A stretch of 64,000 bases of DNA from Perna viridis (taxonomy: Eukaryota): positions 5,828,001 to 5,892,000 of the forward strand of contig CM074511.1 of the NCBI GenBank assembly GCA_037379345.1, read 5' to 3'. Numbering within the stretch: the stretch's first letter is position 1; each line of letters starts with the position of its first letter. The translations under genes and the position numbers were made by a program. Below, piece by piece: positions 28,101-52,100 of this stretch. The notes under the pieces were generated by a model. The model did not search any database and was not told where the DNA came from. It saw only the letters and a list, made by a program, of their open reading frames with translations.

Positions 28101-31100
28101 TACTGCTGTATGGAACTAAATATTGTCTCCCAGACTGATTGGAAATTTAAGACTTCAAATTTTTGTGAAATATTAATGTTGATTAAAGTTTTCAAATAGA
28201 AAAAAAAATACTAATTGAAACTTAATTGGCAAGTACTTCTGTTGCTTTTAAAAACTCTCATTTTCCAATTATTTTTTTAAACCCTAAAGATTTGATAAAA
28301 TAAAATGATCTATTGAAAAAGAAAATAGACTTAAAGGGAAAAAAATAAATTGCTAAAATAACAATACTATATTCCATTAGTGTTATTGAAGCGTTTGTTT
28401 CTGATTTGTTTTTACTCATTTCAACTCAATACTCAATAGGCTATTCCATATATGACACTTACAATAGTGCAGTGTCAGTAAAGGGGTTGATTATTTAATA
28501 CAGTGAGAGATATTTCACTGAATGGAATGAATAAAAAAGATAGGATTTCTATGGAACATCTGTTCAGTTTGTATCAGTAGTTAAAACAGTTGTGGTTGAG
28601 TTTATATAGTATATGTACATCACATTTTGTCATGAAATTCTCTTTGTAAATAGATGAAGTGATTTTGAAAATTTCAGTTTCACAAATGTTTTGTCCCTTG
28701 AGTGTGTAACTATTACTTGATTGAATGTCAAGTGTTTCAATTTTTAATAAATGAGCAATTATGTATAAAATAATCTACTGAAACACTCCCGTAAAACAGG
28801 AATTAAAGCTGAAGTACACTTTATTCTAATAAATGTTTCACGAATATCATTTTTAATTGTTCTATCTGACATATCTAAAATTCACAACAGAATGACATTA
28901 AAGAATTTATAAACAGATATAAAAATCAAGTGCAAGAAATCTAGACTAGTACAGAAAATCACTTCCCCAAATAAATTGACCATTATTGGTTGATTATACC
29001 TTGTTCCTTGTTGTTCTACTCCAATGCCTGTCTGTACATCTTGTTCTACTCCAATGCCTGTCTGTACATCTTGTTCTACTCCAATGCCTGTCTGTACATC
29101 TTGTTCTACTCCAATGTCTGTCTGTACATCTTGTTCTACTTCTATGCCTGTCTGTACATCTTGTTCTACTCCAATGCCTGTCTGTACATCTTGTTCTACC
29201 CCTATGCCTGTCTGTACGTCTTGTTCTACTCCAATGCCTGTCTGTACATCTGGGTATGTCCTTAAGATAAATGCATTAAATTTCTAACAAGCGGAATATA
29301 TGTTGTTTCAGTCATCTTATGACATTTTGTAATTAGAGATTTTTTCACACTATGTTTATGAAGCATATCAGATTGATTTTTTTGTCCAGAAGTCAGCTGT
29401 TGTGATCATTAAAAATCCTCATTAGTCAGAAAAATCAATTAGAAACTATAAGATGAAACACATATTGGGTCATTTTTTTTCCTTGACATTTAAAAGAAAT
29501 TTTTGCTAGAAATAGAGTTTAAATGAATAAATGAATCTAATGAGAGACAAACTATTGAAGTTTTTCATAATTTTCTTTCAAATTATCGGAGGAAAGACAT
29601 GTTAAGAAATGAGGATGTCTTGTTTCAATAATGAGTTATCAGTCTTTTATCATATGTGTCCCCATCTTTGTCAGGACAATTTCATGCAGAAGTCCAGTAT
29701 TACCCATATTTCACTCGACATGACTTGGGCTATATCTTTTTAGTTTAGGTTCTTGATGACATTGATACATCTCCACTAATATACTTCATATTAGAAATAC
29801 TAAGTCCAGCAATCACATCAGTTAATACTGTAAGTGAGGGAGACATTGAGAAATACGATCTTGATAGTACTCAGTGTTCTAGGATTCCACATTCCTGTTA
29901 ACTAGGGCAAATGCAATTTTGGTGTGGGAAAATTACACATTATGTTTCACTCCCCCTTTTCTTAAATACAGAAACCAAACTTTCATTGTGGATAAGTATT
30001 TTCAAAAATCTTTTGTCGTGTTTACGGAATCCATTTAAACAAGTTTTTCAAAGGGATGTAATCCACCAACTGACAACCTGGTTTGGTGGTCTCATTGGTC
30101 AAAGGAAGAATAGCAAACATTTTTCTTTGAAACTTAGACTGTTTTCACTTCTATAGGTAGCTAAATGTTTTAAAATGAGTTATTTAAAATTATAAATGTA
30201 CTTACCAATAAGAAAAATATTTGAATTTGTAGTGTGCTGCTGTACATTGCTCCTGTCTGTCAGTAAACCAGCCTGTCAGTTTGGGGAGTTACCTACCTTT
30301 GCTCAAAGTTTAAGAAAAAAAAAACATGTCAAAGTCAGAAATATGAAAAAGGTCTATTAGAGTTTTCTTGGTGAAACCTATAATTTTCAAAAATCCTAGA
30401 CTGTACCGTAATGGCTTGTTACGTTATAGTACACTGTACTACCATTAATAATATTAATAATAAAACCTTTATTATTAAGTATAAACTATAAGTATTAAAA
30501 GTGTTCAGTACCTTTTAACCACTTAGCACATTTTGTTTACAGATAACCAGACATATCAGTACAATGATCCTGTAAATATCTTCCCCATACTGGGCTCTAT
30601 CTTTTTATGTTACGGTAATTTGGTCTTATCATTGATTCCAATAACTATTTTGGCAGCCAAGTTCTCATTATATCAGTAGGTTTCCTCTTGGGTGAAGTCT
30701 TTATTTTTCTAACCTTATCTCAAACATTTGATACTAAGAATTGGTAAAATCATATTGGGAGCGATGTACTTGATTTTTTAGCTTGATATGATCTTAACAC
30801 TTATCTGATCCCAATTCTGTGATGATGAAAATTAAATTTAGAAAAAGTTATGTGATATTCTCACTATTCCATGGGTATTCTGTACTTCAATGTTTAACTA
30901 GGCTTTCTACGGGATGAGCTGGTAGTAAAAGATTGGTAATACTCTTAATCTTCCATGGGTATTCTATACTTCAGTGTTTAACTAGGCTTTCTACAGGGTG
31001 AGCTGGTAGTAAAAGATAGGTAATACTCTTAATCTTCCATGGGTATTTTGTACTTCAGTGTTGAACTAGGCTTTCTACAGGACGAGGAGCTTGTAGTAAA

Positions 31101-34100
31101 AGATAGGTAATACTCTTAATCTCCCATGGGTATTCTGTTCTTCAGTGTTTAACTAGGCTTTCTACAGGATGAGCTGGTAGTAAAAGATAATCTCCCATGG
31201 GTATTCGGTTCCTCAGTGTTTAACTAGGCTTTCTACAGGATGAGGAGCTTGTAGGAAAAGATAGGTAATACTATTAATCTCTATTAATTTAGTAAAAGAT
31301 AGGTAATACTATTAATCTCTATTAATTTAGTAAAAGATAGGTAATACTCTTAATCTTCCATGGTATTTTATACTTCAGTGTTTAACTAGGCTTTCTACAG
31401 GATAAGTTGGTAGTAAAAGTTCCATGATACTCTCATTCTGTACTACATTGTTAATCTAGGCTTTTTATATGAAGAACTGTCACAGAGAATGTGTTCCCAT
31501 TACAATAGAACCCAATTCTATCTAGATATACCCTTTCCATTTCCTACTTTTGCCCTCTGGGGCAGTTATATTTGCAAGGCATACACATTATTTTCAATTA
31601 AAGGAAGTGCTGACTCAGGTATTAAGAAATATGCTTCAATTTCTATGGAAGTGTGTCTGAATTCATTTTGTCATTTTCAACTACTCCAGGAAATATGCTT
31701 TCCATCTGGAAGAGATTCTTGGGCATTTTAGCATGATATATTTTGTACTAATGTTTTAAATCGTTATTGTGTAAAAAAAAATTGAAACATAGATTTACCT
31801 TCAGTAATGAATGGTATATATTATTTCTCTACTCAAGATTGTAAAATTTATCTTTAACATGCAAACGTTAGCAGGCATGTTAAATCTAAATTTTACTATT
31901 GAGAGTGACAAAATGATTTAAATCATGAATAGGTTAATGGAGCATTGGTTTCTCTCACAATGTCTGTAGAAAACTAGAAAGCAGACATTTCATCATCACC
32001 CAGTCAAACGCATTTTAATCAGATGTATAGAATGGGAGAAATAAGAGATATGCATTATTTGGAAATTTTTGACTGGAACGAGAGTTCCTTCAAACATTTT
32101 AGAATAACAACACTTGCACATGCAGAAAAATGTTTGTTGACTATTCCATCACAAAGAAAACCCAAGACTTGATAAGATTATATATACTAGATATTATCTT
32201 TTATGCAGCTCTAATGGTCTATGTTAATAACCTTAGGATTGGCTTTTCTCTAAACTCCTCTTTTTATCATTGCTGTGAAAATATTCAGATTGACATTAAA
32301 GCATATTTTATCTCTAGTTTTATTTCTAGTCATAACAAAGTCTGAAGTACTAGCATTGGTAACCAAACTACTGTTTCCTTAATTGTTTCAATACAAGTCC
32401 CAGTTTTTTTTTGGCATTTTACCAAAAAAAATTATTTGGTACATGAGCAAAAATTGAAAAATATCAAATATTGTATTTTCAAAGCTAGTTGAATTTATGT
32501 GTTGTCAAGTAGGTTGTATAAATTTGAAAAAGTCATACAACAAAACACTTTTTTTTCACATGCTTTGTTGTACCAGAGTTAACTGTAGGTCTGTCATATA
32601 TTTTATATTTAGCCACATATGTACCGATGAAAAGGTGCTTTGTGATACCTTCCATTTGACTTGCAGATGATAACTTGGCAGATAAAGGATTTTTTCAAAC
32701 TTGCACAAGAGTTTAGATCAAGATCACTCCTGTTGTTAATTCTCCAATTACATTGTTTTTGTCTTTTTCCCACACCCCTTTTTATAATTTCAGTCGTGGT
32801 GTTCATACTTTATTGCCCAATGTTTTGGTTATTGTTTACAACTAGTGAGGTGCCTTTTTCTATTTTTCAACCCTAATTACAGTTTTGTTTGTCTATTTAC
32901 AGTAAGAAGAGTGCCTCCGCATTTCACCATGCCACCAAATAATGTTTCGGTCAATCCTCACACAAATGTCAGCTTGACCTGTGTAGCTGTAGGTTCACCC
33001 ATGCCAAAGGTCAAGTTCAGGGATGGTCCAATAGAGTTGACCCCTGAGGATGAGGAACATATAGGAACCAATACTCTGGTCCTTATAAATGTTACTGAGA
33101 GTAAAAACTACACATGTGTTGCTTCATCTGAACTGGGAAATATAGAACATGTTGTTGAAGTCGAGGTCAAAGGTAAGATTTTCAATAGATTCTAAATAGC
33201 AAAAGAGAAGACTTTTTAGTTATGGTGAAGTTGATATACAGGGAGTCTAAGACAGATAGATACATTTTGAATTAGTTTAAAGTTTGTTATATATGTAATA
33301 CATGCAGCAATCTACTTCTTACTAAAAACATTAACATTATTTTACAATACAATTCTAGTTATGTGTTGTTGATCACTTTTCTAGGGATAATTATGGATGA
33401 TAAAAGTCTGGTCCCATGCTGCTACTGTAAGAACCTCTCCCTTAAATCTCTTTCTCTTCATCAAAGTATATTATGAAAGGTTTTAAGCTTATCATAGTGA
33501 TTTATCATAACATAAATTTTCCAGATAAAGTGTCATGATATCATAATGTCCTTATCTTCTCAGCTTACTCAGTCCATTTATGCTACAGATATCTTGTTAT
33601 GCTGTAATATGTAAAGGCATAATGTGTAGAATGTTTAATGTTTTCTTTGTACAGACAGCTGATCAATGATAAAAATTGAAAGTATTTATAGTTTGAAAGC
33701 TCAAGAAGTATTTTTGCCATTTAAGTCACAAAACTCTCTTCTTTTACATACTTGTCAAAAGCATTGCTTGATTTTTATTTAGGTTTTAGCCACTTATTCG
33801 GTTCTGTTTAATTTTTTTTTGGCACAAGAACCCTAGTGATATTATGTATATGAAGTATATAAAATATCATTGTCTTTTCTGTCTATCTGCTGTGAAGGGT
33901 TGAGTGAATATACATGTATTTATACCCCCACAGACAAACCTAAGGGATATATTGGAATCACCCTATCTGTCTGTCTGTTGGTCTGTCTGTCAATTTTCCT
34001 GTCCACATCCTTAGTAAGCACAACATCACCTACACTGTGCAGTGATGACTGATGATCCTGAAATTATCAAGCTATCAATCAGGTTTAAATTTTAACCTCT

Positions 34101-37100
34101 TGAGAGAAAAATAATAGAGAAAATGCTTATAAATCTTTATCTGGAGGAAGAATTGTGTGTTCATGATGTCTCTGCTCCAACTCATTTGCTACTTCTTCTT
34201 AAAGTGGTTAAACAAAATGAAGTGAGTAAATTTGATTAGGCCTTATGTAAATATCAGATTTAATCTCTCTCTCTACATATATATACACCTACAATCTTGT
34301 AATTGGCCAGAGCTAATAAACCCAACTAGGAGTGTGGAATAGTGGAAATGGAAGTTAGACATGCAGGCATGATGGCCATTAATTCAATCGAAAAAAATAT
34401 CAAATATATTCATAATCATATTAATTCACATTTTTAAAAGGGTTGATGACACTCTTTCGAGACAAATACACAGCATCCATTATGAGTTTATAATTCAATA
34501 ATTTGCAAAAATAATCAGGACATTATTTCTAATTTTCCTAAACATGTCAATAAATTAGAAAAATAAATGCAGATTGATTCAGGTTCTCCTCTGTGTTTTA
34601 TATTTAATGTTCTTGGTTCAGGTAGCAAAGCCTGTTGAGGAGAGGGATTTTGTTTGAATTATTCTGTGTCTATTGGGAATATTTTGCTGTGGAGAAAATA
34701 TTGACAGATTTCAATGAAGCGTTCTTTGCGATATGTTTTAGAGAAATAGGTATCAAATTCACATTCGAAGACATTTCTGATCAATTGCTGGATATAGTTG
34801 TGAGCTAGTGTTTAATTACTTGAAGAAAATTGCTTTTTCACTATAACTTTTATTGAAGCAGGATTAAAGATTTAACGGACTGTTTGATTACATTCTTAAT
34901 AATCAACTTACAGTCATTTTATGAAAACCAGGAAATATTAATTTGGATTACTCAAAACTTCTAAAATTGATTTCTTCATATAAAAAATATATTTTTTATT
35001 TGTGAAAAATCAGTGATTATATGCAACTATTAAATAAAGCATCAGAATTTTTTAAAAAATGTTCATTAATGTTTAATCATGATATAAAATTTGTTTTTGA
35101 TGGAAGGAAATGGATGATTTCATTTAATATCCCTGTCAGAAGTTCTGTTATTTCTCTTAGAATTTTATACCCTTTATCAGTTAAACAGGTTCTTTCTGAG
35201 TCCTTATCTTAAAGATCCTCATGATAAGAATAAAGTTTGTTATAGTGCCTTGAATAAATTGGCCTCCTTGCAAAAACAAAGATTTCCTGCATTTTGAACT
35301 GAGTGTAGATTAGACAGTTAGTAGCATGGTGAGTTGCCATAGAAACGTTGATTAGGGATGATGTTGTAACCTATTGACCCACCAATCAACACTAGGTATT
35401 GCCATCACATGATAAGATGCTACTTTTAGACAGAAATAGCACTCACACATATCTTTATAGCAAGTGCATGTGGAGTGGACATCAATAACTATTCCACTGT
35501 TGGAATTTTCAGCTTTTAAGGGGATATTAATTATATTACTAAGTGATAGTGCTGTGTTCAGTGAGAGGAGTTTGTTTGATTAGGTTAGAGCATGCATTTT
35601 CTTTGATATTTGGATTAATTAACAGCGAAACCATGCAAATTCATAGGACATTTTTAGCTTTTTACTCATTATTAACCTTACTTGGGACTGGAAACTTAGC
35701 TGAGATCCCACACCCTCCAGTGAATTTTCATGCTAATGATGTAGGACCTGGATTTATTCAGTTAGCATGGACCCCTGTTCCTGGAGATGACATCCAATAT
35801 TACAAGTTACAATACAGGGAGAAAGGAGATATAAATGGATTCATTGAGGAGAGAACTAATTTACCAGGACTTAAAGTCCAAAATCTTTCTCCGTTCACAG
35901 AGTATCAATTTCAAGTTGTTGGTGTTAACAGTTTAGGGGATAGTAGACCAACAGATATTGTAGAAAAGAGAACTAGTCCAATGGGTTTGTATTACATTCT
36001 TTTAGTAGTCTTAATTTAAATATTTCAGAAACTTTTCAGTATTTTTTATTAAGTTTGATGGATAGTATAGATGTTTTTTGTAGTAGTTCTCTCTTTCTAC
36101 CAATTGTTCATTCACTCCATATATTTCTTTCTGATTGAATTTGTCATCTTCCATGTAGGAAAAGTAGTTATACTGAAAAACTTCTTAAGCCTTGAAAATT
36201 ATAGCATGAATATACTTTAACCTGACAAATTAGATATCAGTCGATTTAATAGAAGTTCTATTTATGATCTTCCTCTCAAGCACCTTTTCTAACAAGAAAC
36301 ACATGCTTATAATTGTTGCCAAGCTCAAAACTTACATTGATTTTTTGTGTGTACAATAATACATAATACAATCTAGGTTTTCATGGAGAATGAATTGTCT
36401 TTTTGTAATTAACAGGCAATTCTGGTGATAATGATGCAATTATTGTCATAATCAGATTCCATTTGTATCAATTGCTCTGTAAATTACATGTACATGTATG
36501 TAAATTATGTCAATTGGATTTGTTGTACAAGCCTACAATTTTTTGAAGAATGTTGACAACTCTGAATATTTTGTATTCAAGTAAATGTCAGTATCTTAAT
36601 TCTTTAGTAAGATTTTCCAAGTTTTTTTTTCATCTCTTAGAAATTTGATATTACTACATTTTGGATATCTAGATTTTCAAATGAAAACAAAATCAGTTAA
36701 ACTTGAAAGGTGTTATTTTGTTCTGGAAATAATGCACGGATCCCGCCAACATTACTCTACTGTTAATTTCCTGTACACGTGTCCAGAAGTTTACAGTTGC
36801 ACAACATCATCTTTAATTTCAAAATCTTTAAAATTATGTGTTGATAGAAATACTGCAAATACTCCTGTCTACTGCACCTGTGCACTTAGTGAAAAAAATG
36901 TTTATGAATGATGTAAGGAGTTAAAGTAAAAATAATGAAATTTTACAAAATAAATCATGGAAGTCTTGACATACATTCTTGACTTTTGTGATTACATAAT
37001 TAATGGTACATCTGGCATGTCTGAAACAAAACCATGGTGAGCTTATATAGAACAGGGTTCTTTCTTATCAGGTGTCCAGCTGTTGTATTGCAAGGGTATC

Positions 37101-40100
37101 TACAGGGCACTATTATTACATAGTTAATATTTCTAGTAATCATGTTGTAAATTGAAGGAACCCTTGTTAAATATTTTGATATTTATATCAGATATACGAT
37201 AGGGCTTGGTGTATTCCTTGGCCAATAAGATTAAGTATAATGAAAGGTCTATTTTTTCCTTTCCTTTCCGAAGTATTAAGGTTATGGTGTGTATAGTTCT
37301 GTCTTGTTCTTGATAAAATTTAGTCATTCAGTTATTGTCACATTAAAATAGGTCACATTTTACTAGTTCCCTTCTGGTTCTGTAACAAAATTTTCTATCT
37401 TCTTTAACCTTTAATGGTTAGATTTCTACATCAAGTAACATCATTTAATTAAAACATTAATGATGTGATTAGATTAGAAAAGATGACATATTTAATTCTG
37501 TCATTACAACACCCTAGGTCTTGGCATGCTTTAATTTCCATAATGTGAAGTAGATCTAAGGTGGTGATGTTCTATCTAGATTACATGGGGTACCAGCGAA
37601 AGAAGTAATTAGTTACCTAGTGATAAACTCAGGTCATCTATGCCATTGTCTAGATATGCTCTGATAATAACACAAGTTATGAGGGATATTAAAATAGATT
37701 GTCAGAAAAAAAAGGGGGAATGACTGATAATCAGAAGATAGCAAATTCAGAATGATGTGCAATGATTCGTCAAAAGTCAAATCAGTTCATAGGTTTAAAT
37801 GTTAGCAAGTTATTATTATTATAATGCTGATTTCGTCAGGTTAAAAAGTTGAATTTCCCTGGATCTTGTTGTCAGGAAAATGGGGAATAAATATCAGCAG
37901 CCAATTAATTCCTGTTTGTTGATATGGTAGTAATAACACCCTGATGATAAGTGGTGATAATTTACTGACCATAATATCCCACAGATTTTGGCTTGATATC
38001 ATACTGTTACATGCTTATTAATATAGCATCCAGCTGTGTACCTACCTTTTATCCTTAGCCATTGTTTATCATTTTCTGCCAGACTGTATAATTACTATTT
38101 TGATACTTTTGAAATGAACAGTATATTCTAGATTCATGCTCTCTTCATACTCTGTGCACTCAACACTTTCCTAGATTTTAAGTTTTTGTCTTGACCAATT
38201 CATTTTAATTTTCTTCAATTATTAAAATGAAGTACAAGTAACTTAACAAATTTCCCAACTGGATATACATCTGTCCAATTTGTTCTCATCCTGTTTAATT
38301 AACTTACTCTATTTATTAAGTGCTAGTTGTTTCATTCCTGGCTAAAACCACCTTAGAACAGTTTAGTGGCTTGCTCATTAATTCAAATTATATCAATGTT
38401 AACATGACTCAGTTTTTACCTTCCAAAGTTCAGTGCAGTTGTTATTAGAAGCCTAAGTAAAAGAAGAATTACAATGACTAAGCTGAGTTAAGAATCTTTT
38501 ACTTAGCATATAGGATGATTTGGACAAATGAATAATTTTACTTATCTCTCTACACCATTCACATTTGGCACAAAAGGATTTTCTGTGGGTTTTTTTTTTT
38601 TGTTTTGTTTATTTTTATTATTATTTTTCAACTTGTATAATTTTTAGAAGTTTGAAAGTATTTATATGATTTGACTCTCAGATTTTTGTGGTTTTTCAGG
38701 GTCAGAATTTAAATGAACAAACAGTAATTTAATAAATCATGCAGATAGTATACAATGTGTAACAGTATGTAGTTACAGAATCTTAGTTCATGATTGTACA
38801 ACATCTCTACTTCATTCCTTATTGAATGATATACCTGACATCCTTGCTGCACATTTAGTCAAATACATGTATGAACCATTATCATATTGTTGATCCTTAG
38901 CCAGAGATAAAATTAGATACACTTCCCCCCTGAGAGGAAAACATTTGTCCTCATCCGTTTGATGAAGTAGAAGCATTATCCAGTGCAAACAAATAATTTA
39001 TGATCCTTTTTCCACGACAAACTGTGATGGATGGTAAAGTTTCAGATGTTTGTTCAGGGAATTTTATATGCTGTTTTTGCTTTTCTACAACTTCACATTA
39101 TCTATTGAAGTTTCACATGGAATACTCTAGTCATTTGATTTAACTATCTTTTTAAATACTTTGATCCATCAAATGGTACCTAGCTTTGATCATCTTCTAC
39201 AATTCTCAGATTTTATGAAATCAGATTTTTTTTTTAATTGACATCAGAACAAAAGAATATGTCACTGCTCAGACCACTTGTTAGTCATTACAGAAGCTGA
39301 AAGCTGTTTCCAATTTATGTATTTTTTTCCCTCTTTTATATTTTCAATGTTAGGATAGAGGACCCAAGTGAGTGTCAGAGAAGAAGCACTAATCCAGGCC
39401 ATGTAGTGCCTTTCTGTACTTGTAATTTTGACTTGATACCATGATGGTGTTCATTTATATAAACATCACCCATTGTACTGCCATTAAAGTTTGATAAGAA
39501 AATAATTGCATCCAGAAATTGGTATGGTGTGAGTGTTTCTTTCTAAAGTCATGAAAATGCTTTCAAACATCTGAAATTTTCAGATAAAACCTGATTTTCA
39601 TTACTTAAGTGACAGTTTTACAAGCACCTGCTTGAGAGGTTCAGCATTATAAAGTACATGTAGCTATTTAAACCAAAGTAGCTTGATGTTTCAATTTTTT
39701 ACTTAAGAATTTAATTTAAATCTAAAACATCAATAAATAGAGGGAAAATGAAGCTTCTACAACAACAAATTTCTATAAATCTACCATCAGCTCCAGACAA
39801 GAAGCCAACATTTGTATGTGAAGAATTCTCTAGAGTTTAATAAGAAAAGAAAAAGGTGTCTTGTGACAGTAATTATATAAGTCATAAATAGCATATCTTG
39901 TTTTGCTTTCTCTACTTAGACTGTATATGACCTCAGAACATGACTTGTTAGGTTTGAGTGATTTCCTAATAGACTTCAGCTGACAGGCAGATGTTTCGTG
40001 CCTATGGTTTCCCTTCTACTAACCCCAGGACAATGCTTTCCCATACAAAGAATTTCCCCAGAGGGTGTTTCCTCTACTGATAGTTTGACACTGAAACTGT

Positions 40101-43100
40101 TGTCTTTGACTTTTCAGTAAGGTTTCTATGTCTGTGGTCAGTAAGAAGGACATCAGTTGTTTCTTTGACCTTGAACTGACCTCAGGTCAACATTATGTTA
40201 GTTATTGTTCATTCCTAGTTGACAGACCTTGTGTTAAGTTACAACTCTTGAAATAGTTAGGATTCCACTGAGTGCTGTAAACATGGGAGTATGTAGGAAA
40301 CTTTACATGGCTTTCTGTTAAACTCATCAAACCATGGCATATGGCATGTACACTATACAATAATAGGCACCTGATGGAAATTTCATGAAGTTTTCTCTGC
40401 ACTTTCTTTCAATCTTTGATGGATGTGCTGAAAGAACAATTTACAAGGATGTTTCTATGTTCATAACGAGATGAAGTTTTAACATACTTAATTTCTTTTC
40501 TTTTTTTGCTTAAATAGTACTCATCATATTTAACAGAATCTTGCTGATAATAGAAGTATGCCATTAAAACACTCTCCTACATGTAGCACTATACTGACAT
40601 TGTAATTAGTATTTATTGTGTTTAGAAACATTTTGCAGTTTCTGTATGTCACTAGGACGTCTTCAGTACATAAATTTTATGTAATTGATTCAAGACCATT
40701 ACCCCAAAACACCCATGGCAGGCGCAGATCCAAGGACTGGCGTACCAGGCATACGCCCCCTCCCTAAATCGGTAAGGGAAAATAAATCAGAAAGTTTCAC
40801 CCCATAATATTTTTTGCCTTGCTTTGGACGGCATTTAATTCGATTTACGCCCCCCTAAACTCAAATCCTGGATCCGCCCCTGCATGAACACACACACATG
40901 ACTTTAAGAGGGGCTTGATGCAAAACCATTTTTCTGGACTAATACATTTTGAATTTTTTCTTCTGACATAACTAGATTACTATACTCTTCACAGCAGTAA
41001 AGTTTACGGAGCACTCCTTTCATTGTAAATGTAATCATTCATACTCCTCAGATTATGTAGATTCAAGGTGTTAATTATATAATACCTGTTTCCTGTCATT
41101 AAAAACTCCCTCCTGACTTCCATACTAATGAATTTTTATGTACCTTCTTTAATGTGTTCAGTTAGATTGTAGACCTATAAATGTCTTTCTAGTTTCTCAC
41201 TGCAGAATATGTGTAAAACTTTGAGGAGGTATGATAAAACTCGGCAGCATTTGTCTTTCATGGCTTCTTTCAGGTTGATGCATTTGAAATTTAATTGACG
41301 TCTTAGAAATGTGCTAATGTAAAAGCACCTGAAACAAATAGATTTACTGTAATTAGAAGTTACATCCTTGTATCAAATTTTCGTGTCTGAAATGCATCAA
41401 TTAATTTTAGTTTGTAGCCATTTCTACATATTCTCTGAGTGCATTAATCAGCTCACACATTCTTGAGTGTCATTCTTTCCTAGACTGATTATTTTCTTGA
41501 GCTTCATATCTGACTATAAGATGTTGAGGTCTACCCAGTTATGTAGGATTACTGACAAGCCAATTTAGATAGAATAAATCTATTCAAGATACATGTATAC
41601 AACTACTACCCACTCATTAGAGTCGGGCAGTATTGTAATCACCTTTTCCATCAGTCCATCTCTCCATTACACTTTTCTAAAAACGGTAGATTGAGTAGAT
41701 TTGTCATCCTGTTCATTGACTACTAAATATTGGGTGACATTGTATCATGAACCCTTTCCTTACATTTCAGTTGGGGGAGGGGTATTCATTGTATCATGAA
41801 CCTTTTCGCTACATCGCTGTTGGGGAGAGGTGTCATTGCATCATGAACCCTTTTCCCAACATTTCTGTTTAACTTGACAAGATTCATATTGTTCCAGTTA
41901 CATTAAGCATATTTATTAATGAAGATCAAAGATATGAAAACCAATCTGGAGAAACTGTTCTTATCATCATAAGTTGGTCAGACTGAAACAGCTGTTAGAT
42001 ATGAATGATATGGAAATAAACAGACAGAATTTAGAATGTCAACACCAATTTGAGAATACTCAGTTGTAAAATGATTCTTGTTGATTCTAGAAAAACAGGT
42101 GGAATTATAGATTTCTGTGGTTATCATGAGTGACATGTTGATATTTGATTTGTCTCACTTCATATGTCCTTTGGCGTGTCATGTAACTGGTTATTTTTAT
42201 AGGTTAAGAAAAATGTTTAGGTCACATCAATTATGAATGATAGTGTTTTTTATCTACAATCAGAAGAAGTATGAGATATTCATTTTTGGTCGGGTTGCAC
42301 TCACAACAAATTGTCTTTAGAATGTTGGATGTCTGGTGGGTGGACAAGGAAAACTTTATGGTAACATTTTTCTCAGCACTTCTACTCCTGTTTGCTGTCT
42401 TGGTTTATTTTTAAACACTGCCATTCAAACAGAAAATTTTTGTGAAATTTTTCTTAGCAAATGTAAATCACAGCCACTAGATATTTAATAGGTAACCTTA
42501 GTATGGAGTCCAAAATCATGGGATGCTATTTCAGGTCCGTCACCAAAATAAATGATAGAAACAGTTTATGCTGCAAATACCAGGCTATTTATTACTTTGA
42601 CCCATTTTCCATTGATAAATTTTGTTATTTTACTAGAATTGAAAACATATTACTGGTCCCAACCTTATCTTCAGTACCAGTTCTCATGTGACACAATACA
42701 CAGGTATAAATTTACAGGTTGGGTTTTAATGGTTATTTCACTGTTTTAAATTATTAATTCTCTGATCAAAAATACAGATGGTATCTGTCTTGTTCATTTT
42801 ATAAGTCAGATTAATGTTGAAAAATATTGTTAATCAAAGCGAGTACTGTATTTATCAGAAGTTGAAGGTTTTATCAGTTTCCATGTGTGAAGCATATGAT
42901 GATGTTTTATGATTGAGTGGGAGGAATTAAGGAGAGGCTTGAACTCACTGGTTTTTCTTACCATTGAATACATAACATTTACCCTTCTTTTATATTGAAG
43001 AGTTGTTATGGTTTTGATATTTGAAATGTTTTAAATATGAATTTTTAATTCTTTTGATAATTCTTTGTCCAGCGGCTCCAGCCATATTATATGGCTTTAC

Positions 43101-46100
43101 CAATCTTGCATGGAATTACAAAAGAAGTTAAGTAACTAGAGGTGTTTTAGAAATTCTGTTCTAACTCAGTTTCTGCCATTGGTCTTTGTAGTAGGTTTGT
43201 TTTGTATTAGTATCATTTAGTATCTTGTTGCCATTCAGATTCTAATATTTCTAATACTGAATATATGACTCACAAGTGTCTTGGAAATGAACACTTCAGA
43301 TTGATGGCTCTGTATAGTGTTGACTTTACTTCAGGTATAAGTCAACATCATAGATTGTATAGTAACTAATGGGATTAGCTTTAAACTCCATCAAATAGTA
43401 ATTTGCTTCCAAAAGCACAATTTTCAAATTTGATGAAACATTCCTGAGATCCTCATCGATTTTGATCATTTTTCATTCAAGGGTTGTGTACTTTTTCCAT
43501 GGTGTGAATCTTTTACGGCAATCTGCATTGACAATTGCTGTTAGTTTAACATAAAGTAATCAAGTCCCAGTTTCTACAATATTGATTAAAAATTAATGAG
43601 GTTTTAATTTGATTTTGTCAACAATATCTCATTCTTCATTACTAGTTGTGTAATATTTATGATTGCACAATACAAACAAGCAAGAAGGTTTAATGTTAAA
43701 AATCCATTACATGTTACAGTTTGAAAGCCTGTACAATGTACTAAGGCATTTATCTTTTTTTCATGCAGATTCTTTTTTGCAATTGCATTATGTAGGTTGA
43801 AGTTTTTCCTATAAATCATACAGTTAAATGTTCTAATGCAATCAAGACAACTTTACACGAGTCTCTGAAGAATTGCTAAATCTTCCCATGTGTAGAATTG
43901 TGAAGGAAGCTGAATATTTTTGGATGGTTTTTAGTCAAGCTGGACAACATTTCAAGTTGACCATGCATTTATTCTTTAAAGGCTACTATGTCTGCTTTCC
44001 ATCAGTCTTTTCTAGTTGTGCCTGTCTGTAATTAAATATAGCTTTTCATCCATCTATGGTCAACCAAGTTGTCATACAATTTTAATCAGTAGAATAAGTG
44101 TCATTTACTGTAGCATATTAGTTCTGGTTTAAAATTTCCAAGTGTGTAATTAGCACAATATACTGCTGAAGGGAAGCAATTGATTAGTTTCTCTCACCAC
44201 AACTGTTTTAGAAAGGCAAGTAATTTGTTTCCAATCATCAACTGTACTTTACTTCAGATCATTGAAGATAAGTTTTTGTCTGGTATCATACAACAAAAGA
44301 CTATTATTAAGTATGTTTTAGTGAACCTTGGATTTGTTGAATTGATACTGCTCGGGGTTGTTGCTATGGTGTAGAACTTGAATTGATACTGCTCGGGGTT
44401 GTTGCTATGGTGTAGAACTTGAATTGATACTGCTCGGGGTTGTTGCTATGGTGTAGAACTTGAATTGATACTGCTCGGGGTTGTTGCTATGGTGTAGAAC
44501 TTATTAGATGTTGGCAGAGAACAAGGGACTTAAACTTTCCTGTGGATGTATGCTAGAATAATAGAACAACATATGACAATGACTCAATTATCAGTAAAAC
44601 ATTGTTGGTTGATTGGAAAGTGCTCTAAATAGTGTGCTCTATAGTACCCATCAACAATTTTCCAGTTCCAAGTTTTATATCCTAAAAAAGGAGGTCTAAC
44701 AATGTTTTGACATTTGATGTACGTGCCAGGAAATGCATGTCCTACCAATCCCCTTTTTCCTTGATCCATAGGGAATCCTTAGTTGTGAAAAATGCCTTGT
44801 TTTCATTAAACTCTGTAATTTGAACACCATGGTAAAAGATAAGAAGGGTGGAATAAGTAAGAACTTAATAAAAAGGGCAGACTCAAACTCTCTATCATAA
44901 ATTCTTCCAAGCATCACAAATTCTAAACAAGCTTAATTAACCTTACAGCTTTGGAACATATCTTAAAAAATTAAGCTAATCAATTTGGTGGCAAGTTTAT
45001 CCTCTTTCAAGGTGAAGAATTTATTGGAGAATGATGATACAAGCCAAGAGAAACATGATTAAATCCTTCCATCAGAGAATATTCAGGTGGTGATTGTATA
45101 TAATTAAACCTAACAAACTGAAATATACTGGTACTATCTACAGTACAGTGCTCTCTTTGTTAGAACAAATTGGCAGTATTGTTTGTTTATTCTCAACACC
45201 TTATACTGTTTCCTGGTGTGACAGTAGAAGGCTTGTAAGGTTCTGTTCCTGGTCTGACAGGGCTTCTAAACTTCTAAGGTTCTGTTCCAGGGCTGACAGT
45301 AGAGGACTTGTAAGGTTCTGTTCCCGGGCTGACAGTAGAGGACTTGTAAGGTTCTGTTCCCGGTCTGACAGGAGAGGACTCGTAAGGTTCTGTTCCTGGA
45401 ATCATTTAAAGCTGTCAAATCTATTAGACCTTGCTAGCTAAAACTAAAAGAAACCTACAAATATTACTACGTTTTAAAAATTTGCTTAAATATTATAACA
45501 GTTATGGAGTTAATAGGCTCATGCAAGTTTCCCAGGCTATGTAGTGAAAAAATTAGCTTCATTGTTGAAGCAAGTATATGTTATGAAATTCATTTTATTT
45601 ATTTTTTTTTCTTTGCCAGTTTGGTTGATAGTGACATTTTGCTGTCAAACATTCTTAAACAACAAAAATTGTTATATCACCTTATTAAGCATAAATGTAC
45701 TGAATACAGTTTATTTGTAGGGCCATATTTGATATAATGCTAACATAACCCTTTGGGTCAAAATGCTCAGGAATATTAGATGTTAAACTTTATCACGTAA
45801 GTGCTCAAAAGTTAGATTTGGAATGCTCAGCATTAATGTTATTATAAAGGGATAATGTAGGCATTATTTTACTCCACAATGTCTGTAATAGCTTGAGTCA
45901 GTGGTACTTCTCTTTTATTACAGAAGATTTCTTAACACCTGGAAGGTATTGTACAAATGCTGTAAACATTCCATTTCCTTCATTAAGCTTTTAATTTTAC
46001 AGTTAGACAGTATTTTAACTATCTTACTTTAATGACTGTACAGGTGTTGTGTGATGATACATGTTTCTATACACCTGTGCTTGTAATAGTGAAGGTTTTA

Positions 46101-49100
46101 TAGTAAAAATGTATAGTTGGATTATACCCAAACATTTTAAATACCTCAGATTGGGTTAAGAACAAAAGAATTTTTCTATTCTTAGTTTTTAAAGAATTCA
46201 TATTTCAAATATGCAGTCCTAGGATTTCAGACTTATTGATACCATAGTTTTTTCAGTAAAGGCTCAGAACATTACAGTTATAGAGAGAAGACGTGGTCAA
46301 AAACTGAACTTTATATTTTTTCCCAGTTTTTTTAAGCTAAAGTTAAGGTTGCTCTATTTTATTTTAATAAACAAAATCTTGAAAATGTTATTTTTATTTG
46401 ATACCTAACTGACAAGGAAGTAAATTAGCCTTTACTTTCATTAGTATCCCCCCTTTTTAAGGTTTCATGACTAATCACAATGATGTCTCTGATGACTTTC
46501 TCCTAGACCTTATCTATACAGCTTTCTGATTGATCTCCCTGACGGCCATGGCATATTTTTACCTGTCAATAAATTTCTGAACAAACAGAGGAAAATAATT
46601 GAAATTTCAATCAGTCAGGCAGTACTAAGTGACAAAAGCCTAAAAATCCTATTTTTGATGTGTGCTTTTCTCGTTGATGTAAACAGATTTTTCAATTACC
46701 ATTGAATTATTTTGATAACAATATGCTTCTAGTTAATGAGAAGCTATTACCTAGCATTATTATTTTTGTGGTATGTGACTTTCTAAATGAATTTTCTGAT
46801 TTTTTGTCAATTGATTAGTAAAAATGATGTTACAGTCTTAGAAATAGAAATAAGAAACACATCAACATTTTTATGACTAGTAGAGGTATTTCCAGCTTAC
46901 ACTATTGTTAACTCTATAAACTAACAACCCAGTAATTGATTAAACAGTGGTATCAAAAACAAAATACTTGTATGATTTTGTATAAAAATGAATAAACACC
47001 TGTCATTTGGTTAATGTATTGGAAACTAATATTAACATAATCTGGTGTTTTTGGCAGTAGCAGTGTTTGATCAGTATCTGAATTGGAACTGATGGTAGAA
47101 AATCTGAAGAAATCAAAATATTGATGTTCAAACTTTTGATGCACTGATGTGCTTTCAGACAAACAAGCTTCCTATCTGATGCTCAAAAGACAAAAGCGAC
47201 ATCTAAAACTCTTGTTATGTAAAGGGTTATAGTGAAGATTACTACAGAGGGATCAGTGGTGTATATATTGTGGTTGGTTTGGTGCTTCAGTCATGCATGT
47301 GCACAGAAGTACAAAAAGCTGGCTCTTTACCCATGCTATCTTGTTCAGACTTATCAGTTTTTCTAAAATCAGGTTTCCACAGGTGCTATGATATGTACTT
47401 TTTATTGTTTTATATTTTTGTAGCCTGCTTAGTATTGTTTTTACACCCAGTTGTATCATCAGCTGCCAGATAAGCCTTTTTTTTTGTCAGATTCAAACCT
47501 GATGTTTTATCACTGAACCATGTTTTTCTTTCCTTAAGTTAACAGAATTAATTGTACTCTATTTGTCTACATTCCAGTTAATGTGCAGTTAATACATGTC
47601 TCGTAGTGCTGGTAGAATTTCACGTCAGAAAGATAGTAATCTTCCTTTCTACATGCAGCATCTGACCATTGAGGTGTTATTAAGTCAGTGAGATTCAGCT
47701 AGACAGTTTTGAGATTTGAAAGTTTTTATAGAATTTATTTGTAGACAGAACAAGAGATTTCTAAATGGTTTCAATCTAGACACCTTCTCAGATTAAAAAT
47801 GGATAGGGTCTTTTGGAGATTAATAAGTCGATAATATTTTAATTTTAGAAAGTATATCTATGTAATTTGAATTTGATTGGTTTATCAGACAATTTTCTCT
47901 TGAAATTAATGTGTTTTCTTGAAGTATGAAGGGTTAACTGGTTTTTATACGTCAGTCTGTCAGTAGATTGATCTTCGTTCTATAATGATAAAACAAGTTT
48001 CTTGATGTCTTGATTCAAAAGGAAACAAAACTGGAAGATGTTTCTCCTTTAATCTAAGGCAGGAACCATTTGATTGCGGAAAGGGGGCTATGGATTAATT
48101 TATTATTATTATTTTTTTAATGTTTTGCTTCTTATTAATTTAGAAAAAAATTGTTTGTGATTTGAAGAAAGTTCTTTTTGGAAAAAAAATCTGTAGCCCA
48201 AACCCCCCTCTTTCCCCTGAAAAACAAATGATTGCAGCCTAATAGGAATATATATATGGCTAGTATGACAGGGACACTGTTACTACATACATTTGATCAT
48301 GATATAAGATATTTAGTAATATCTAGCAATAAGTGTGATATGAAATGAAAGTACACAATTAATTATCTTCCTGTTAATTTGTTCTGGTATCTTGTCTTAG
48401 ACATCTTTATGAGGAGGGATGTAGAAATTCTGTTGATCATATAATATGAGGAAGTAGTTCTCTATTTCAGCAATACTGTAAACATAATGACCAGTGTAAT
48501 GGTAACAATTATTACATTATCTTTTTTATATCTCTTGGTAATTTGCTGTAATACATGATAATGGCAATCTGGGGTATGGTAAGGAAACCTAACCAAAGTT
48601 TCAGAAATAAAATGGTCCTATTTTATTCAACCTTGGTGTGTGTGTGATAGTGCTGGTCTTCAAGAACAATTATTTAATGACACCAGCCACTTCCTTGGAA
48701 CCTGAATTAGTGTTGTCATCACAATAATTCAATCAAAGACTGAAGTCTTCAAAGTCTCTTATCATCAAATATTCTATACCACTGATTTTGGCTTGCTTTC
48801 AACATCCGAATCGAATATGATATGCTCTAAAATAAGGTGACTTTTGCTAGAATCTTGGTTCCCTTGTTATGATTAATCTTTCATAACCTTGATGACCCGA
48901 ATGCACATGTCCGAATGTTTTTCAATCAAAACAACTTGTTACTAGGAAGGGTAGGTAATGTTTTCATTCCTTTCTTTCAAATTTTAAGTGATCTTTTGGG
49001 TCGTTTATGATCTTGATCAGGGAACCAGATTGGGAACCAGATTAAACAACTGGCAATGATTATACCGTTACAGATCATAAACATTATCGGGCCCTTATGT

Positions 49101-52100
49101 TTTTGACCTTATATAGTTAATTGTAATGAGCCTTTGTGTCCAAATCAGAGACTGAGTAATGTTACATTGAGGTCAATGGTGGCCAATCATTTCATCTTTT
49201 AATGTAATTTTCCCATTCTCATACAAGCAAAAAACACACGTAGACGTGTATGATATTTAAGAAGTACATTTTGATCTGTTATGAAGCTAGAATTGACGGT
49301 AAACATGGCACCAATCAGCAACAGTGCCCCGTGCAGGTCCCGGTGTTAAAAGAATAGGCCTGCAGCAACGCTAAGCTTGTCGTAAAAGGTGACTAAATAG
49401 TGCTCAGAACCCTAGCCAGGGGCTAGGGCGCTCTGCCCACAGAGCAACTGGGATGTGTGCCCCAAGTGGTGGAATGGAGTACCCCTGGCGTGTTACATGC
49501 TGGGGTTGTCAGGCTATAATACGGAAAACCTGACCGCAAACCATAGTGGTGCACCGTGTTGGGAAAGATGCCACATTCCTCGCACGTTAAAGAACCCTAC
49601 TGTGGTATTCTCCCGGAGTAGGAACCATAGGGCTCCGCCACAGGAGGCTAAATTGCCCGACCCTCCCTATTTCTAGTGGCAATCAAAATTTGTCGACCCT
49701 TTTGTCCTTGTGTCCCATCCCTTTTTCATTTCATCATCATTTCATGTTCATTTTAACATCAATTTCATGTTAATCGTCTGAATATAGCTGAAATATTGCT
49801 GCTCGGACGTTAAATCCCAACAAGCAAGCCAGCCAATCAGCAGCATAATGTTGAGTAGTAATATATAATTATGCAAATCATATGCAAATGTAAAGAACTG
49901 AAATTAGAAGTGCAAGATGTCACTAACAATATTAGCGACTTAAGAAGCCTGTTCCATTAGTGTGGTTTTATTTATTACAGGGAGTAAAATAGTCAACTAA
50001 AGGGGATGGTCTTCCTTTAATATAATGACCATGGGTAGTTAACTAGGCATGTGACTGTCTATCAGACATGGATTCATTAACCTATAGAATAATACAAAGT
50101 TAACTGTGTTAAGTAGTTCATTGTGAAATGGTCATTTAATCAAAGGAAAGCAAACTCTATCCCCTGAAGTAAAATGTCTGACAGATACTTGATAGTTTTG
50201 TTCAGACCACCCGAAATAATTGGCAATATTCTGCATCTGAAGGTGAACCATTTGCACCTGAGATTTCTACTGTATTCTGTTCGTCAACTTATATCACACC
50301 TATTCTTACACCTGAATCATTTTGCTAAAGATTCTTATCTGTATTTTCTGATTGAATTCAAGCCTCTGGGAGACCTCCAGTTGTGTAACTGACATCATCA
50401 ATATTTTTTGTCCTATCTTGTGATAAATCAGACATTTGTAGTCATGCCAAATTGTACTAGATGATTACTATAATAATGTGTGTAATATGATGTGGTGCAA
50501 TATGGTTTGACATAGTGGTCAGTTAGGGAATGCTTTGATCAGAGGCTTGATTCAATCAGTTTGTTCTCATAATGCAAAAAAAAATGTTGCTCAAGCAAGT
50601 ATTGTAATTTGTTAAAAATTTGTTAAAGTCTTCATTTTTTATATAGGTGCATATATTCAATTTTGATCAGCTGTCTGCAAGGGTGTTATAGCAGTACAGT
50701 TATGCACATTATCCACTCTGCAGATATAGGATTTATTGTGTACGATGACTTGGTGATATGAAGAAGTCATCTTCCAGCTTTAGGACCCAAGTCTTTGCCA
50801 AGTTTCATATTTTTTCTATTGTTCTTTCCAGCTCCAGGAACCCCACCAAGGAATGTGGTAGCCATACCACTAAGTGCTGTGACACTCAACGTTAAATGGG
50901 ATGCCCCAGAGAAACCTAATGGAATTATCAAGGTTTGAGATGATAGTCAAATTAAACAGTAGATTAATGGAATAGAAACAAGTCAAAACTTTATTAAGCT
51001 CTCAATAACTTGTGCTGCTTGGAATACACAAATATTTTTGTTTCCAAAAGTGTAAAAACAGCTTACCTGAAGATGGGTATTTCATAAAACACAACAATTA
51101 CTCATGAAATTATATCATAACTGTAAACATCCTAATAATATGTGAATATAGTAGTTTACCAACCCTACATGTTAAAACAGTTATTGGATACACACACAGA
51201 TTCCTTGTGGAAGTTTTTTTTTATTAAGGCCAAAAAAAAATGTCTGTTTAGGGTTACATTCCTCCCAAAAATAGGGTAGGTAGGTAGGCATTTTCATTTA
51301 ATATTTTTTTTTTTTCATTTTATTTTTTCTCGACTAAAGTTGAACCTAAAATAACCTCATGTTTAAGTCATGAAAGTGTTTGGTTTTAAGTAGAAAGTTT
51401 AATTTTTAACATACACACCTATTAATCATGTCTTTTATTACAATACACTTATTTTTTGTAGGAATTTTTAATAAAATATAAGTACAATTTATTTTAAAAT
51501 TTTACCTGCAAATATATTTTAAAAAGTTACAAATTTCTCTGTTCATTGATGTACTTTTTGAAAGACAAAGTGAAAAATGCATATTTAAATGAATTAAGTG
51601 TTATCAAAATGTTTCATTCATTTGTTTTATTAAACCTTGAGTATGAAGAATGTCTGACCTGTATGTTATAGATGTACAAACGTATGTCTTGTACCGTAAA
51701 ATAAGTGGCAACAAGCAGAAACCACTACCCTGTCTTGAGCAGCTGAGTTCACTCTAGAACTAATACAAGTTCATGTTGCTGATTGTAATATGTGTATCTT
51801 CATTGTGTTGTTCTATGTGTCGTCTATGTCTAATTATTTTGTCTGGTTTTGGGTTTTGGACTTCAAAATTCAAACCTCCGTAAGGTTTTAATGTTTAGTT
51901 ATTAAAAAACTATCAGTCTAAAACTATCAGTTTGACACTGGACAAAGACGGGGGGATAAAATGCTCTTGAATATAATCTGTTTAAGTTGTAATTGAACCT
52001 GTACAAGAAAAATCTAATTATATCATGTACAATTACTTTAAATCTAGGAGAATGTTTAAAGAACTTTAATCAAGAACAAAATTTTTAAGTATTGTTCCAC

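What the first reader, a model, noticed from the sequence alone, without database searches (positions are those of the whole stretch)
35633..35984. Hidden signal peptide fused to the FN1 exon predicts an Ig-less LAR isoform
Seen: the 'intronic' sequence just upstream of FN1 is open in the FN1 frame from an ATG at 35633 in strong context (gaaaccATGc). It reads [29 protein letters not shown], with a basic n-region, a 13-residue hydrophobic core and a small-residue c-region ending exactly at the domain start. The acceptor needed by the full-length form (cttgggactggaaacttag) lacks a pyrimidine tract, unlike the other acceptors, as expected if it is constrained as coding sequence. A good acceptor (taattaacag, 35625) sits 7 nt before the ATG and is out of frame with Ig3, which suits a non-coding first exon. 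Known: LAR Ig domains bind proteoglycans and synaptic ligands, and C. elegans ptp-3 makes a short Ig-less isoform. Inference: a dual-use exon gives a receptor starting at FN1.
Basis: partly seen in the sequence, partly recalled or inferred. Interest (0 to 1): 0.82.

Follow-up and report, generated by a model that had tools for sequence, protein, structure and literature searches.

The report
Ig-less LAR phosphatase isoform, own leader
Inside an intron of a mussel-like LAR receptor phosphatase gene, a conserved internal start site produces a second receptor that swaps the three immunoglobulin domains for its own secretion signal plus the first fibronectin domain, which probably gives the gene two different ligand-binding heads.

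Summary

- **The reading frame:** The frame from the ATG at 35633 through the FN1 domain is open.
- **RNA evidence:** RNA contigs from three independent studies run unbroken from about 35453-35484 through the ATG and the supposed acceptor at 35699 to the donor at 35984. They then splice to the FN2 exon at 50832.
- **Conservation:** Three other lineages, probably other mussels, keep the same ATG, frame and leader peptide. Only positions 2, 3 and 18 of 23 vary. DNA differences are 12-16 of 16-22 at third codon positions, pN is 0.03-0.10 against saturated pS, and P is about 1e-7. The leader is therefore protein-coding.
- **Likely promoter:** A roughly 380-nt conserved non-coding block (35108-35490, with a CCAAT box) sits at the RNA 5' ends.

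- **Not dual-use:** The exon is not shown to be dual-use. The Ig-bearing mRNA joins Ig3 (33172) directly to FN2 and skips FN1. The AG at 35698-99 is not conserved, and one lineage has no in-frame acceptor at all.
- **No upstream non-coding exon:** The acceptor at 35625 is read through, so no upstream non-coding exon is used.

The closest precedent is C. elegans PTP-3B. The mussel form differs because it starts at FN1 and FN1 appears private to it. SignalP, CAGE and annotated isoforms could not be checked. The scan had not followed this up before.

The parts
35108..35490 (+). Conserved non-coding block, taken as the promoter and transcript 5' end of the short isoform. Contains CCAAT at 35382-35386 and GATAAG at 35411-35416.
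   Evidence: 77% identity over 383 nt to L013 and 81% over 298 nt to L016, while most of the intron cannot be aligned. 84% identity to L001 over 35321-35487, higher than the coding exon at about 70%. Indels are not multiples of three. RNA contigs begin inside it.
35453..35632 (+). 5' UTR as covered by RNA. Contig starts are at 35453, 35476 and 35484. Holds two tiny uORFs (35468-35488 and 35592-35606).
   Evidence: table 8: records 5, 19 and 22 start at record position 1 with no extra upstream letters and no coverage at 35000-35452. uATGs.
35633..35701 (+). Start codon and 23-codon leader (signal-peptide-like). Basic n-region (H4, R5), 11-residue hydrophobic core at 7-17, and a small-residue c-region [G/A]-T-G-N-L-A.
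   Evidence: invariant in four lineages except positions 2, 3 and 18, with differences at third codon positions. AF2 gives a detached low-confidence helix at 7-18.
35702..35984 (+). FN1 domain coding part of the same exon. Phase-1 donor G|GT at 35984/35985.
   Evidence: Pfam fn3. The best solved matches are FN1 of human LAR (6tpw 14-105), PTP-delta (300-392) and PTP-sigma. The RNA contig continues from 35984 into the 50832 exon.
32903..33172 (+). Ig3 exon of the long isoform. Its phase-1 donor joins 50832 directly and skips FN1.
   Evidence: Pfam Ig_3/I-set; contigs of depth 55-91 in X1, X5 and X6 run from 33172 into CTCCAGGAACC..., which occurs only at 50832.
50832..50932 (+). First common exon (first half of FN2). 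It accepts either Ig3 or the leader-FN1 exon.
   Evidence: The second half, 52991-53209, matches FN2 of PTP-sigma, LAR and PTP-delta.

Best explanation
The gene is a LAR-type receptor tyrosine phosphatase with Ig1-3, about nine FN3 domains, a transmembrane segment and two phosphatase domains. An internal promoter lies in the intron after the Ig3 exon, and transcripts start at about 35450. The first exon (about 35453-35984) carries roughly 180 nt of 5' UTR, an ATG at 35633, a 20-23-residue cleavable signal peptide and the whole FN1 domain. Its phase-1 donor joins the common FN2 exon at 50832. The product is a type I receptor with the order SP-FN1-FN2...-TM-D1-D2 and no Ig domains. The long mRNA made from the upstream promoter joins Ig3 straight to FN2. 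In the RNA examined, the Ig1-3 module and the SP-FN1 module are therefore alternative, promoter-selected heads on one common body. Shown here: the transcript structure, the splice joints, coding constraint on the leader, and conservation of the upstream block. Inferred: the exact start site, cleavage of the leader, membrane topology, and a change in ligand specificity. In the family, the Ig domains carry proteoglycan and synaptic-partner binding; that statement is from general knowledge and was not tested.
For: - **RNA:** Three independent studies were laid (X1, which is the same data as X18, plus X5 and X6). Contigs of 561, 530 and 501 nt cover 35453/35484/35476 to 35984 without a break at 35625 or 35700. 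In X1 and X5 they continue 29 nt into the exon at 50832.
- **Long form:** The Ig3 contigs go from 33172 to 50832. In X6 this is inside a 3740-nt contig.
- **Relatives as genomic ORFs:** Homologous ORFs start with M[16 protein letters not shown][GA]TGNLAEIP.
- **Coding constraint on the leader:** Leader differences by codon position are 3/2/16, 6/1/15 and 3/1/12. pN is 0.03-0.10 against pS of 0.6-1.0. The binomial P is 1e-7 to 5e-7.
- **Start context:** A at -3 of the ATG in all lineages.
- **Conserved upstream block.**
- **Domain identity:** FN1, FN2 and FN3 match LAR-family FN1, FN2 and FN3 in order. Phosphatase D1 and D2 motifs lie 8-15 kb past the window end.
- **Structure:** The AF2 model has the FN3 sandwich at 30-113 with pLDDT above 90, and the leader as a detached helix.
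- **Copy number:** Single copy in its own genome.
Against: - All RNA evidence comes from assembled contigs, which drop rare variants and cannot fix a 5' end or expression level. The run type is only guessed as RNA, although the splicing shows it is.
- No CAGE, 5'RACE or long reads were available, so an unseen upstream non-coding exon cannot be excluded.
- SignalP was not available, so the signal-peptide call rests on composition rules and position.
- The window species and its nearest relative (L017) keep a phase-compatible TTAG|C at the domain boundary, and L013 has a good-looking AG at codon 18. Low-level or tissue-specific Ig3->FN1 splicing is therefore not excluded.
- Only four lineages were found, and their identities were not verified.
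Confidence: 0.8

Rival explanations
1. Dual-use exon. The same exon is both a first exon and an internal exon spliced from Ig3 at 35700, so a full-length Ig1-3-FN1-FN2 form also exists in tissues not sampled.
For: AG at 35698-99 is phase-1 compatible with the Ig3 donor and is kept in L017. L013 has a pyrimidine-rich AG at codon 18. All other known LAR-family receptors have FN1 after Ig3 (general knowledge; solved Ig1-FN1 to FN3 chains appear).
Against: There is no such joint in contigs from three studies. The unitigs pass both 33172->50832 and 35699/35700 without a branch. The AG position is not conserved, and L016/L002 have no phase-compatible AG between the upstream stop and the domain. Pyrimidine content before 35698 is 44%.
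Confidence: 0.15
2. The protein is as described, but the RNA-covered 5' end at about 35453 is not the transcription start. A further non-coding exon upstream is spliced in and was lost from the contigs.
For: Contigs cannot show true starts (notes). Conserved intronic blocks at 33417-33569 and 34571-34721 include an invariant TTCAGGTAG that resembles a donor.
Against: Three runs give ragged starts (35453, 35476, 35484) with no foreign upstream letters, and no AG precedes 35453. The conserved block with a CCAAT box about 70 nt upstream fits a proximal promoter.
Confidence: 0.12
3. Chance open frame in a T-rich intron 3' end, with the RNA signal being partial intron retention. No protein starts here.
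For: T-rich tracts translate into Phe, Leu and Ser. The crude filter finds such leaders at 0.14% of AG sites.
Against: The third-position substitution pattern and amino-acid invariance hold across four lineages with saturated synonymous sites. Coverage starts sharply about 180 nt upstream, and the rest of the 2.5-kb intron is at depth 0-2. The contig is spliced at its donor.
Confidence: 0.02
4. The leader is translated but is not cleaved. It would act as an N-terminal membrane anchor or hairpin rather than a signal peptide.
For: No signal-peptide predictor was run. Conservation of the hydrophobic core is stricter than usual for signal peptides.
Against: The hydrophobic core is only 11 residues. 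It is followed by the helix-breaking, small-residue stretch [G/A]-T-G-N-L-A, which fits the -3/-1 rule. The protein already has a C-terminal transmembrane exon, as type I receptors do.
Confidence: 0.06

Closest known systems
C. elegans PTP-3B and PTP-3C (short LAR isoforms from independent internal promoters; PMC4418752, PMC7281833)
   Same: One LAR-family gene makes a long Ig-bearing receptor and an Ig-less receptor from separate promoters. In the worm, the isoforms behave as distinct genetic units.
   Different: PTP-3B has five FN3 domains and lacks the first FN3 domains as well (PMC4418752). The form here starts at FN1 and keeps every FN3 domain. Here the long form seen in RNA lacks FN1, so the two heads are mutually exclusive. 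No homology between the leaders was tested.
Alpha- and beta-neurexins (long and short isoforms from alternative promoters; stated in PMC13546301)
   Same: An internal promoter with a private first coding exon supplies a new N-terminus for a shortened ectodomain on a shared transmembrane and cytoplasmic body.
   Different: This is an unrelated protein family. It is an analogy of mechanism only, with no membership claim.
Vertebrate LAR, PTP-sigma and PTP-delta (type IIa RPTPs)
   Same: Ig1-3, FN1-3, D1 and D2 are orthologous by sequence.
   Different: The known vertebrate variation is mini-exons and loss of FN4-7 (general knowledge; PMC10883964 covers the microexons). PMC4418752 cites a short human LAR entry with five FN3 domains. 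I found no report of an SP-FN1 first exon or of an Ig3-FN2 long form.

Membership tests
LAR-type (type IIa) receptor tyrosine phosphatase gene | Three N-terminal Ig domains | tested here: met
   Ig/I-set Pfam hits on exons at 14.7 kb, 21.5+24.4 kb and 32.9 kb.
LAR-type (type IIa) receptor tyrosine phosphatase gene | A series of FN3 domains orthologous to LAR FN1, FN2, FN3 and onward | tested here: met
   fn3 Pfam hits. The best solved matches are LAR, PTP-delta and PTP-sigma FN1, FN2 and FN3 in order. Further FN3-like ORFs lie in L003 (not scanned against Pfam).
LAR-type (type IIa) receptor tyrosine phosphatase gene | Single transmembrane segment followed by two tandem phosphatase domains with the HC(X)5R motif | tested here: met
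   Motif scan of L003/L004 finds KNRY, DYINA, FWRM, WPDHG, SAGVGRTG and QTEDQY for D1, and DYINA, FWRM and HCSAGVGR for D2. Hydrophobic transmembrane-like ORFs lie upstream of them. The evidence is motifs only, and no Pfam scan was done.
Ig-less LAR isoform of the PTP-3B kind | Transcript from an independent internal promoter | tested here: inconclusive
   RNA contigs start at 35453-35484 inside a conserved block with a CCAAT box, and no Ig exon is attached. Contigs cannot prove a start site.
Ig-less LAR isoform of the PTP-3B kind | Lacks Ig domains | tested here: met
   The ORF starts at 35633, and the leader is followed directly by FN1.
Ig-less LAR isoform of the PTP-3B kind | Also lacks the first FN3 domains (five FN3 domains remain) | tested here: not met
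   It begins with FN1 and joins FN2. It works like PTP-3B but is a different architecture.
Cleavable Sec-type signal peptide | Basic n-region, 7-15-residue hydrophobic core, polar c-region with small residues at -3/-1, positioned directly at the N-terminus before an extracellular domain | tested here: met
   H4 and R5. The core [11 protein letters not shown] has mean Kyte-Doolittle hydropathy of 2.15. [G/A]-T-G|N or N-L-A|E fit the -3/-1 rule. FN1 starts at about residue 25. These are rule-of-thumb checks only.
Cleavable Sec-type signal peptide | Positive call by a trained predictor (SignalP) or experimental cleavage | not testable with these tools
Dual-use (first and internal) exon | A splice joint from the upstream exon into the same exon | tested here: not met
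   No 33172|35700 joint in the contigs of X1, X5 and X6, and the acceptor AG is not conserved. Rare use is not excluded.

The most novel reading that the evidence does not exclude
In this mussel lineage the LAR gene has turned its canonical FN1 into the private N-terminal domain of a second receptor. Ig1-3 and SP-FN1 would be strictly mutually exclusive, promoter-selected heads, so FN1 never sits behind the Ig domains. FN1 would then act as an exposed recognition domain with its own ligands. This arrangement has not been described for any LAR-family gene.
Probability: 0.45. Interest if true: 0.68.

Novelty: new variant of a known kind. Interest (0 to 1): 0.58.

Why it matters
LAR-family receptors read proteoglycans and synaptic partners through their Ig domains. 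A conserved isoform that drops those domains but keeps the whole phosphatase machinery would signal from different cues.

Together with C. elegans PTP-3B, this lophotrochozoan case suggests that Ig-less LAR receptors arose more than once, or are older than thought. The apparent exclusion of FN1 from the long form is unusual and gives a clean natural domain swap to study.

For annotation, it shows that 'intron' sequence directly upstream of a domain exon can be a conserved signal peptide, which exon-by-homology gene models would miss.

Tried and rejected
- **Exhaustive profile search with leader+FN1:** Giant multi-FN3 proteins swamped the result. No LAR orthologue came back, so I could not check whether annotated mollusc LAR proteins carry FN1 after Ig3 or list an Ig-less isoform. 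Among the returned proteins only P0143 has a phosphatase motif, and only one.
- **Word-based search with the alignment:** It added no lineage beyond the first search. It sees only proteins of 64-205 aa, so its silence about oysters, scallops and snails means nothing.
- **The search for related loci in metagenome contigs:** 113 pattern matches, none confirmed.
- **Own-genome search:** No paralogous copy.
- **Second FN1-like exon between 36 and 50.8 kb:** tblastn found none, so the long form has no substitute FN1.
- **Literature:** No paper on mollusc LAR isoforms was found.
- **Chance reading and intron retention:** Rejected on the codon-position evidence.
- I ran no further search on the Ig3 exon, because RNA-derived ORFs of these runs are evidently not in that collection.

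Full report
**What is in the sequence.** The + strand of the window carries a LAR-type receptor tyrosine phosphatase gene.
- Pfam finds Ig domains on exons near 14.7 kb, 21.5+24.4 kb and 32.9 kb. It finds FN3 domains at 35.7, 53.0, 58.4, 60.2 and 63.1 kb.
- I fetched the 100 kb past the window end. It holds further FN3-like ORFs, transmembrane-like exons and the motifs of two tandem phosphatase domains: KNRY, DYINA, WPDHG and QTEDQY, then a second DYINA, FWRM and HCSAGVGR. These lie 8.5-15 kb beyond the window.
- The exon in question is the true orthologue of LAR FN1. Its best solved matches are FN1 of human LAR (6tpw 14-105), PTP-delta (300-392) and PTP-sigma.
- The 52991 exon matches FN2 and the 58382 exon matches FN3 of the same proteins.

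**The observation.**
- The Ig3 exon is 32903-33172 with a phase-1 donor. An acceptor at 35699|35700 would therefore be in frame, and so would the AG at 35656-57.
- A crude signal-peptide filter placed in frame upstream of every AG in the window passes only 10 of 7141 sites. The feature is already uncommon before any other evidence.

**RNA evidence.** One reads call was allowed (runs found). Four runs were laid on 31000-36999. X1 and X18 give identical contigs and count as one, so three studies are independent. They are listed only as 'RNA?', but exon-only coverage and splice joints show they are cDNA. There are two results.
- **Long form.** The abundant contig covering Ig3 (32897-33172, depth 55-91) continues into CTCCAGGAACCCCACC.... 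That string occurs once in the window, at 50832, directly after a good acceptor. In X6 the joint lies inside a 3740-nt contig. The Ig-bearing mRNA therefore skips the FN1 exon and joins Ig3 to FN2, in frame.
- **Short form.** A second contig (depth 4-17) starts at 35453, 35484 or 35476 with no foreign letters before it. It runs without a break through 35625, the ATG, 35657 and 35699 to 35984. In X1 and X5 it continues 29 nt into the same 50832 exon.
- **Background.** The intron between 33173 and 35452 is at depth 0-2.
- **Branch test.** The contigs end 29 letters into the shared exon. This is what a k=31 graph does where two paths merge. No branch is seen at 33172 or at 35700, so an Ig3->FN1 joint is absent or rare in these samples.
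- **Polymorphisms.** The two polymorphisms seen, 35686 G>A and 35899 A>G, are both synonymous in the proposed frame.

**Conservation.**
- The word search with the 117-aa product returned two other clusters at 69-70% identity.
- Cluster look-up added a third lineage at about 93% protein identity.
- All are ORFs called on genomic contigs, because they read on into the intron after the donor.
- Every one starts with Met and carries the leader, which varies only at positions 2, 3 and 18 of 23.
- **Codon positions.** The DNA behind this invariant peptide has diverged freely. Differences fall 3/2/16, 6/1/15 and 3/1/12 on codon positions 1/2/3.
- **Substitution rates.** pS is 0.6-1.0 (saturated). pN is 0.03-0.10, no higher than in most FN1 comparisons.
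- **Probability.** The chance of so few replacement changes is 1e-7 to 5e-7.
- This is the signature of a translated sequence, not of a splice-signal tract.
- All lineages have A at -3 of the ATG.

**The acceptor.** The AG at 35698-99 exists because Leu22 is TTA and the next codon starts with G.
- The nearest relative, L017, keeps it.
- In L013/L001 that codon is TTG, and a different AG sits at codon 18.
- In L016/L002 no phase-1-compatible AG exists anywhere between the upstream in-frame stop and the domain. At least that lineage cannot place FN1 behind Ig3.

**Promoter.**
- Most of the 2.5-kb intron cannot be aligned between lineages. The exception is 35108-35490, which is 77-81% identical to L013 and L016 with long invariant runs. 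It contains a CCAAT box at 35382-86 and GATAAG at 35411-16.
- Over 35321-35487 it is 84% identical to L001, more than the coding exon at about 70%.
- Its indels are not multiples of three.
- The RNA contigs begin in its last 40 nt.
- I read it as the proximal promoter and start region. This is an inference, because contigs cannot fix a 5' end.
- The 5' UTR holds two uORFs of 6 and 4 codons.

**The leader as a signal peptide.**
- It has a basic n-region (H4, R5) and an 11-residue hydrophobic core (mean Kyte-Doolittle 2.15).
- A small-residue c-region follows. [G/A]-T-G fits the -3/-1 rule for cleavage before N21, and N-L-A would give cleavage before E24.
- The FN3 fold begins at about residue 27.
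- AlphaFold models 30-113 as a confident beta-sandwich (pLDDT above 90). The leader is a detached, low-confidence helix at 7-18.
- No trained predictor was available, so cleavage remains inferred.

**Interpretation.**
- The gene has two promoter-selected heads on a common body that starts at 50832. One is the upstream first exons plus Ig1-3. The other is the SP-FN1 exon.
- The short product is a type I receptor with FN1 at its mature N-terminus and no Ig domains.
- In the samples examined FN1 belongs to the short form only.
The 'dual-use' and 'non-coding first exon' details are not supported.

**Comparison with known systems.**
- C. elegans ptp-3 gives three transcripts from independent promoters. 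PTP-3B has five FN3 domains and no Ig, and acts as a separate genetic unit from PTP-3A (PMC4418752, PMC7281833).
- The mussel form works the same way but keeps all FN3 domains and owns FN1. It fails the 'lacks the first FN3 domains' feature and is a different architecture.
- Neurexin alpha/beta is the same mechanism in another family (PMC13546301).
- Literature searches found nothing on mollusc LAR isoforms. Automated genome annotation may already list the isoform, and I could not check this.

**Limits.**
- Contigs only, from three studies of unknown tissue.
- Four lineages of unverified identity. Earlier notes of this scan call the genome a mussel, which I did not test.
- The large profile search was uninformative.

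Noticed in passing
L003:6835-7155, L003:7264-7503, L003:7516-7740 (window-equivalent about 70.8-71.7 kb, just past the window end): Three neighbouring ORFs each end in a similar hydrophobic transmembrane-like stretch. Two of them share the pattern ...PVCAGVAL.I.GCI.... They look like tandem duplicated transmembrane exons and could be mutually exclusive.
   Followed up: no
window 34571-34721 and 33417-33569: Two further intronic blocks are conserved with the other lineages (72-75% identity). The first has an invariant TTCAGGTAG that resembles a splice donor. Indels are not multiples of three, and only depth-2 read-sized contigs touch 33411-33561.
   Followed up: partly
window 35324-35340: Inside the conserved upstream block, the string AGCATGGTGAGTTG looks like an ATG followed by a donor (GTGAGT). 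The relatives have GTGGGT and GTGTGT instead. There is no RNA coverage here.
   Followed up: no
window 33948-33968 and 36485-36506: Short (about 20 nt) matches to well-covered, unrelated contigs in all runs. They are probably fragments of a transcribed repeat, not part of this gene.
   Followed up: no
window 28975-29284 and 45094-45438: Tandem repeats inside introns that stay open in several frames (repeating [10 protein letters not shown]-like and [12 protein letters not shown]-like units). They look like minisatellites.
   Followed up: no
They are likely one data set deposited twice.
   Followed up: no
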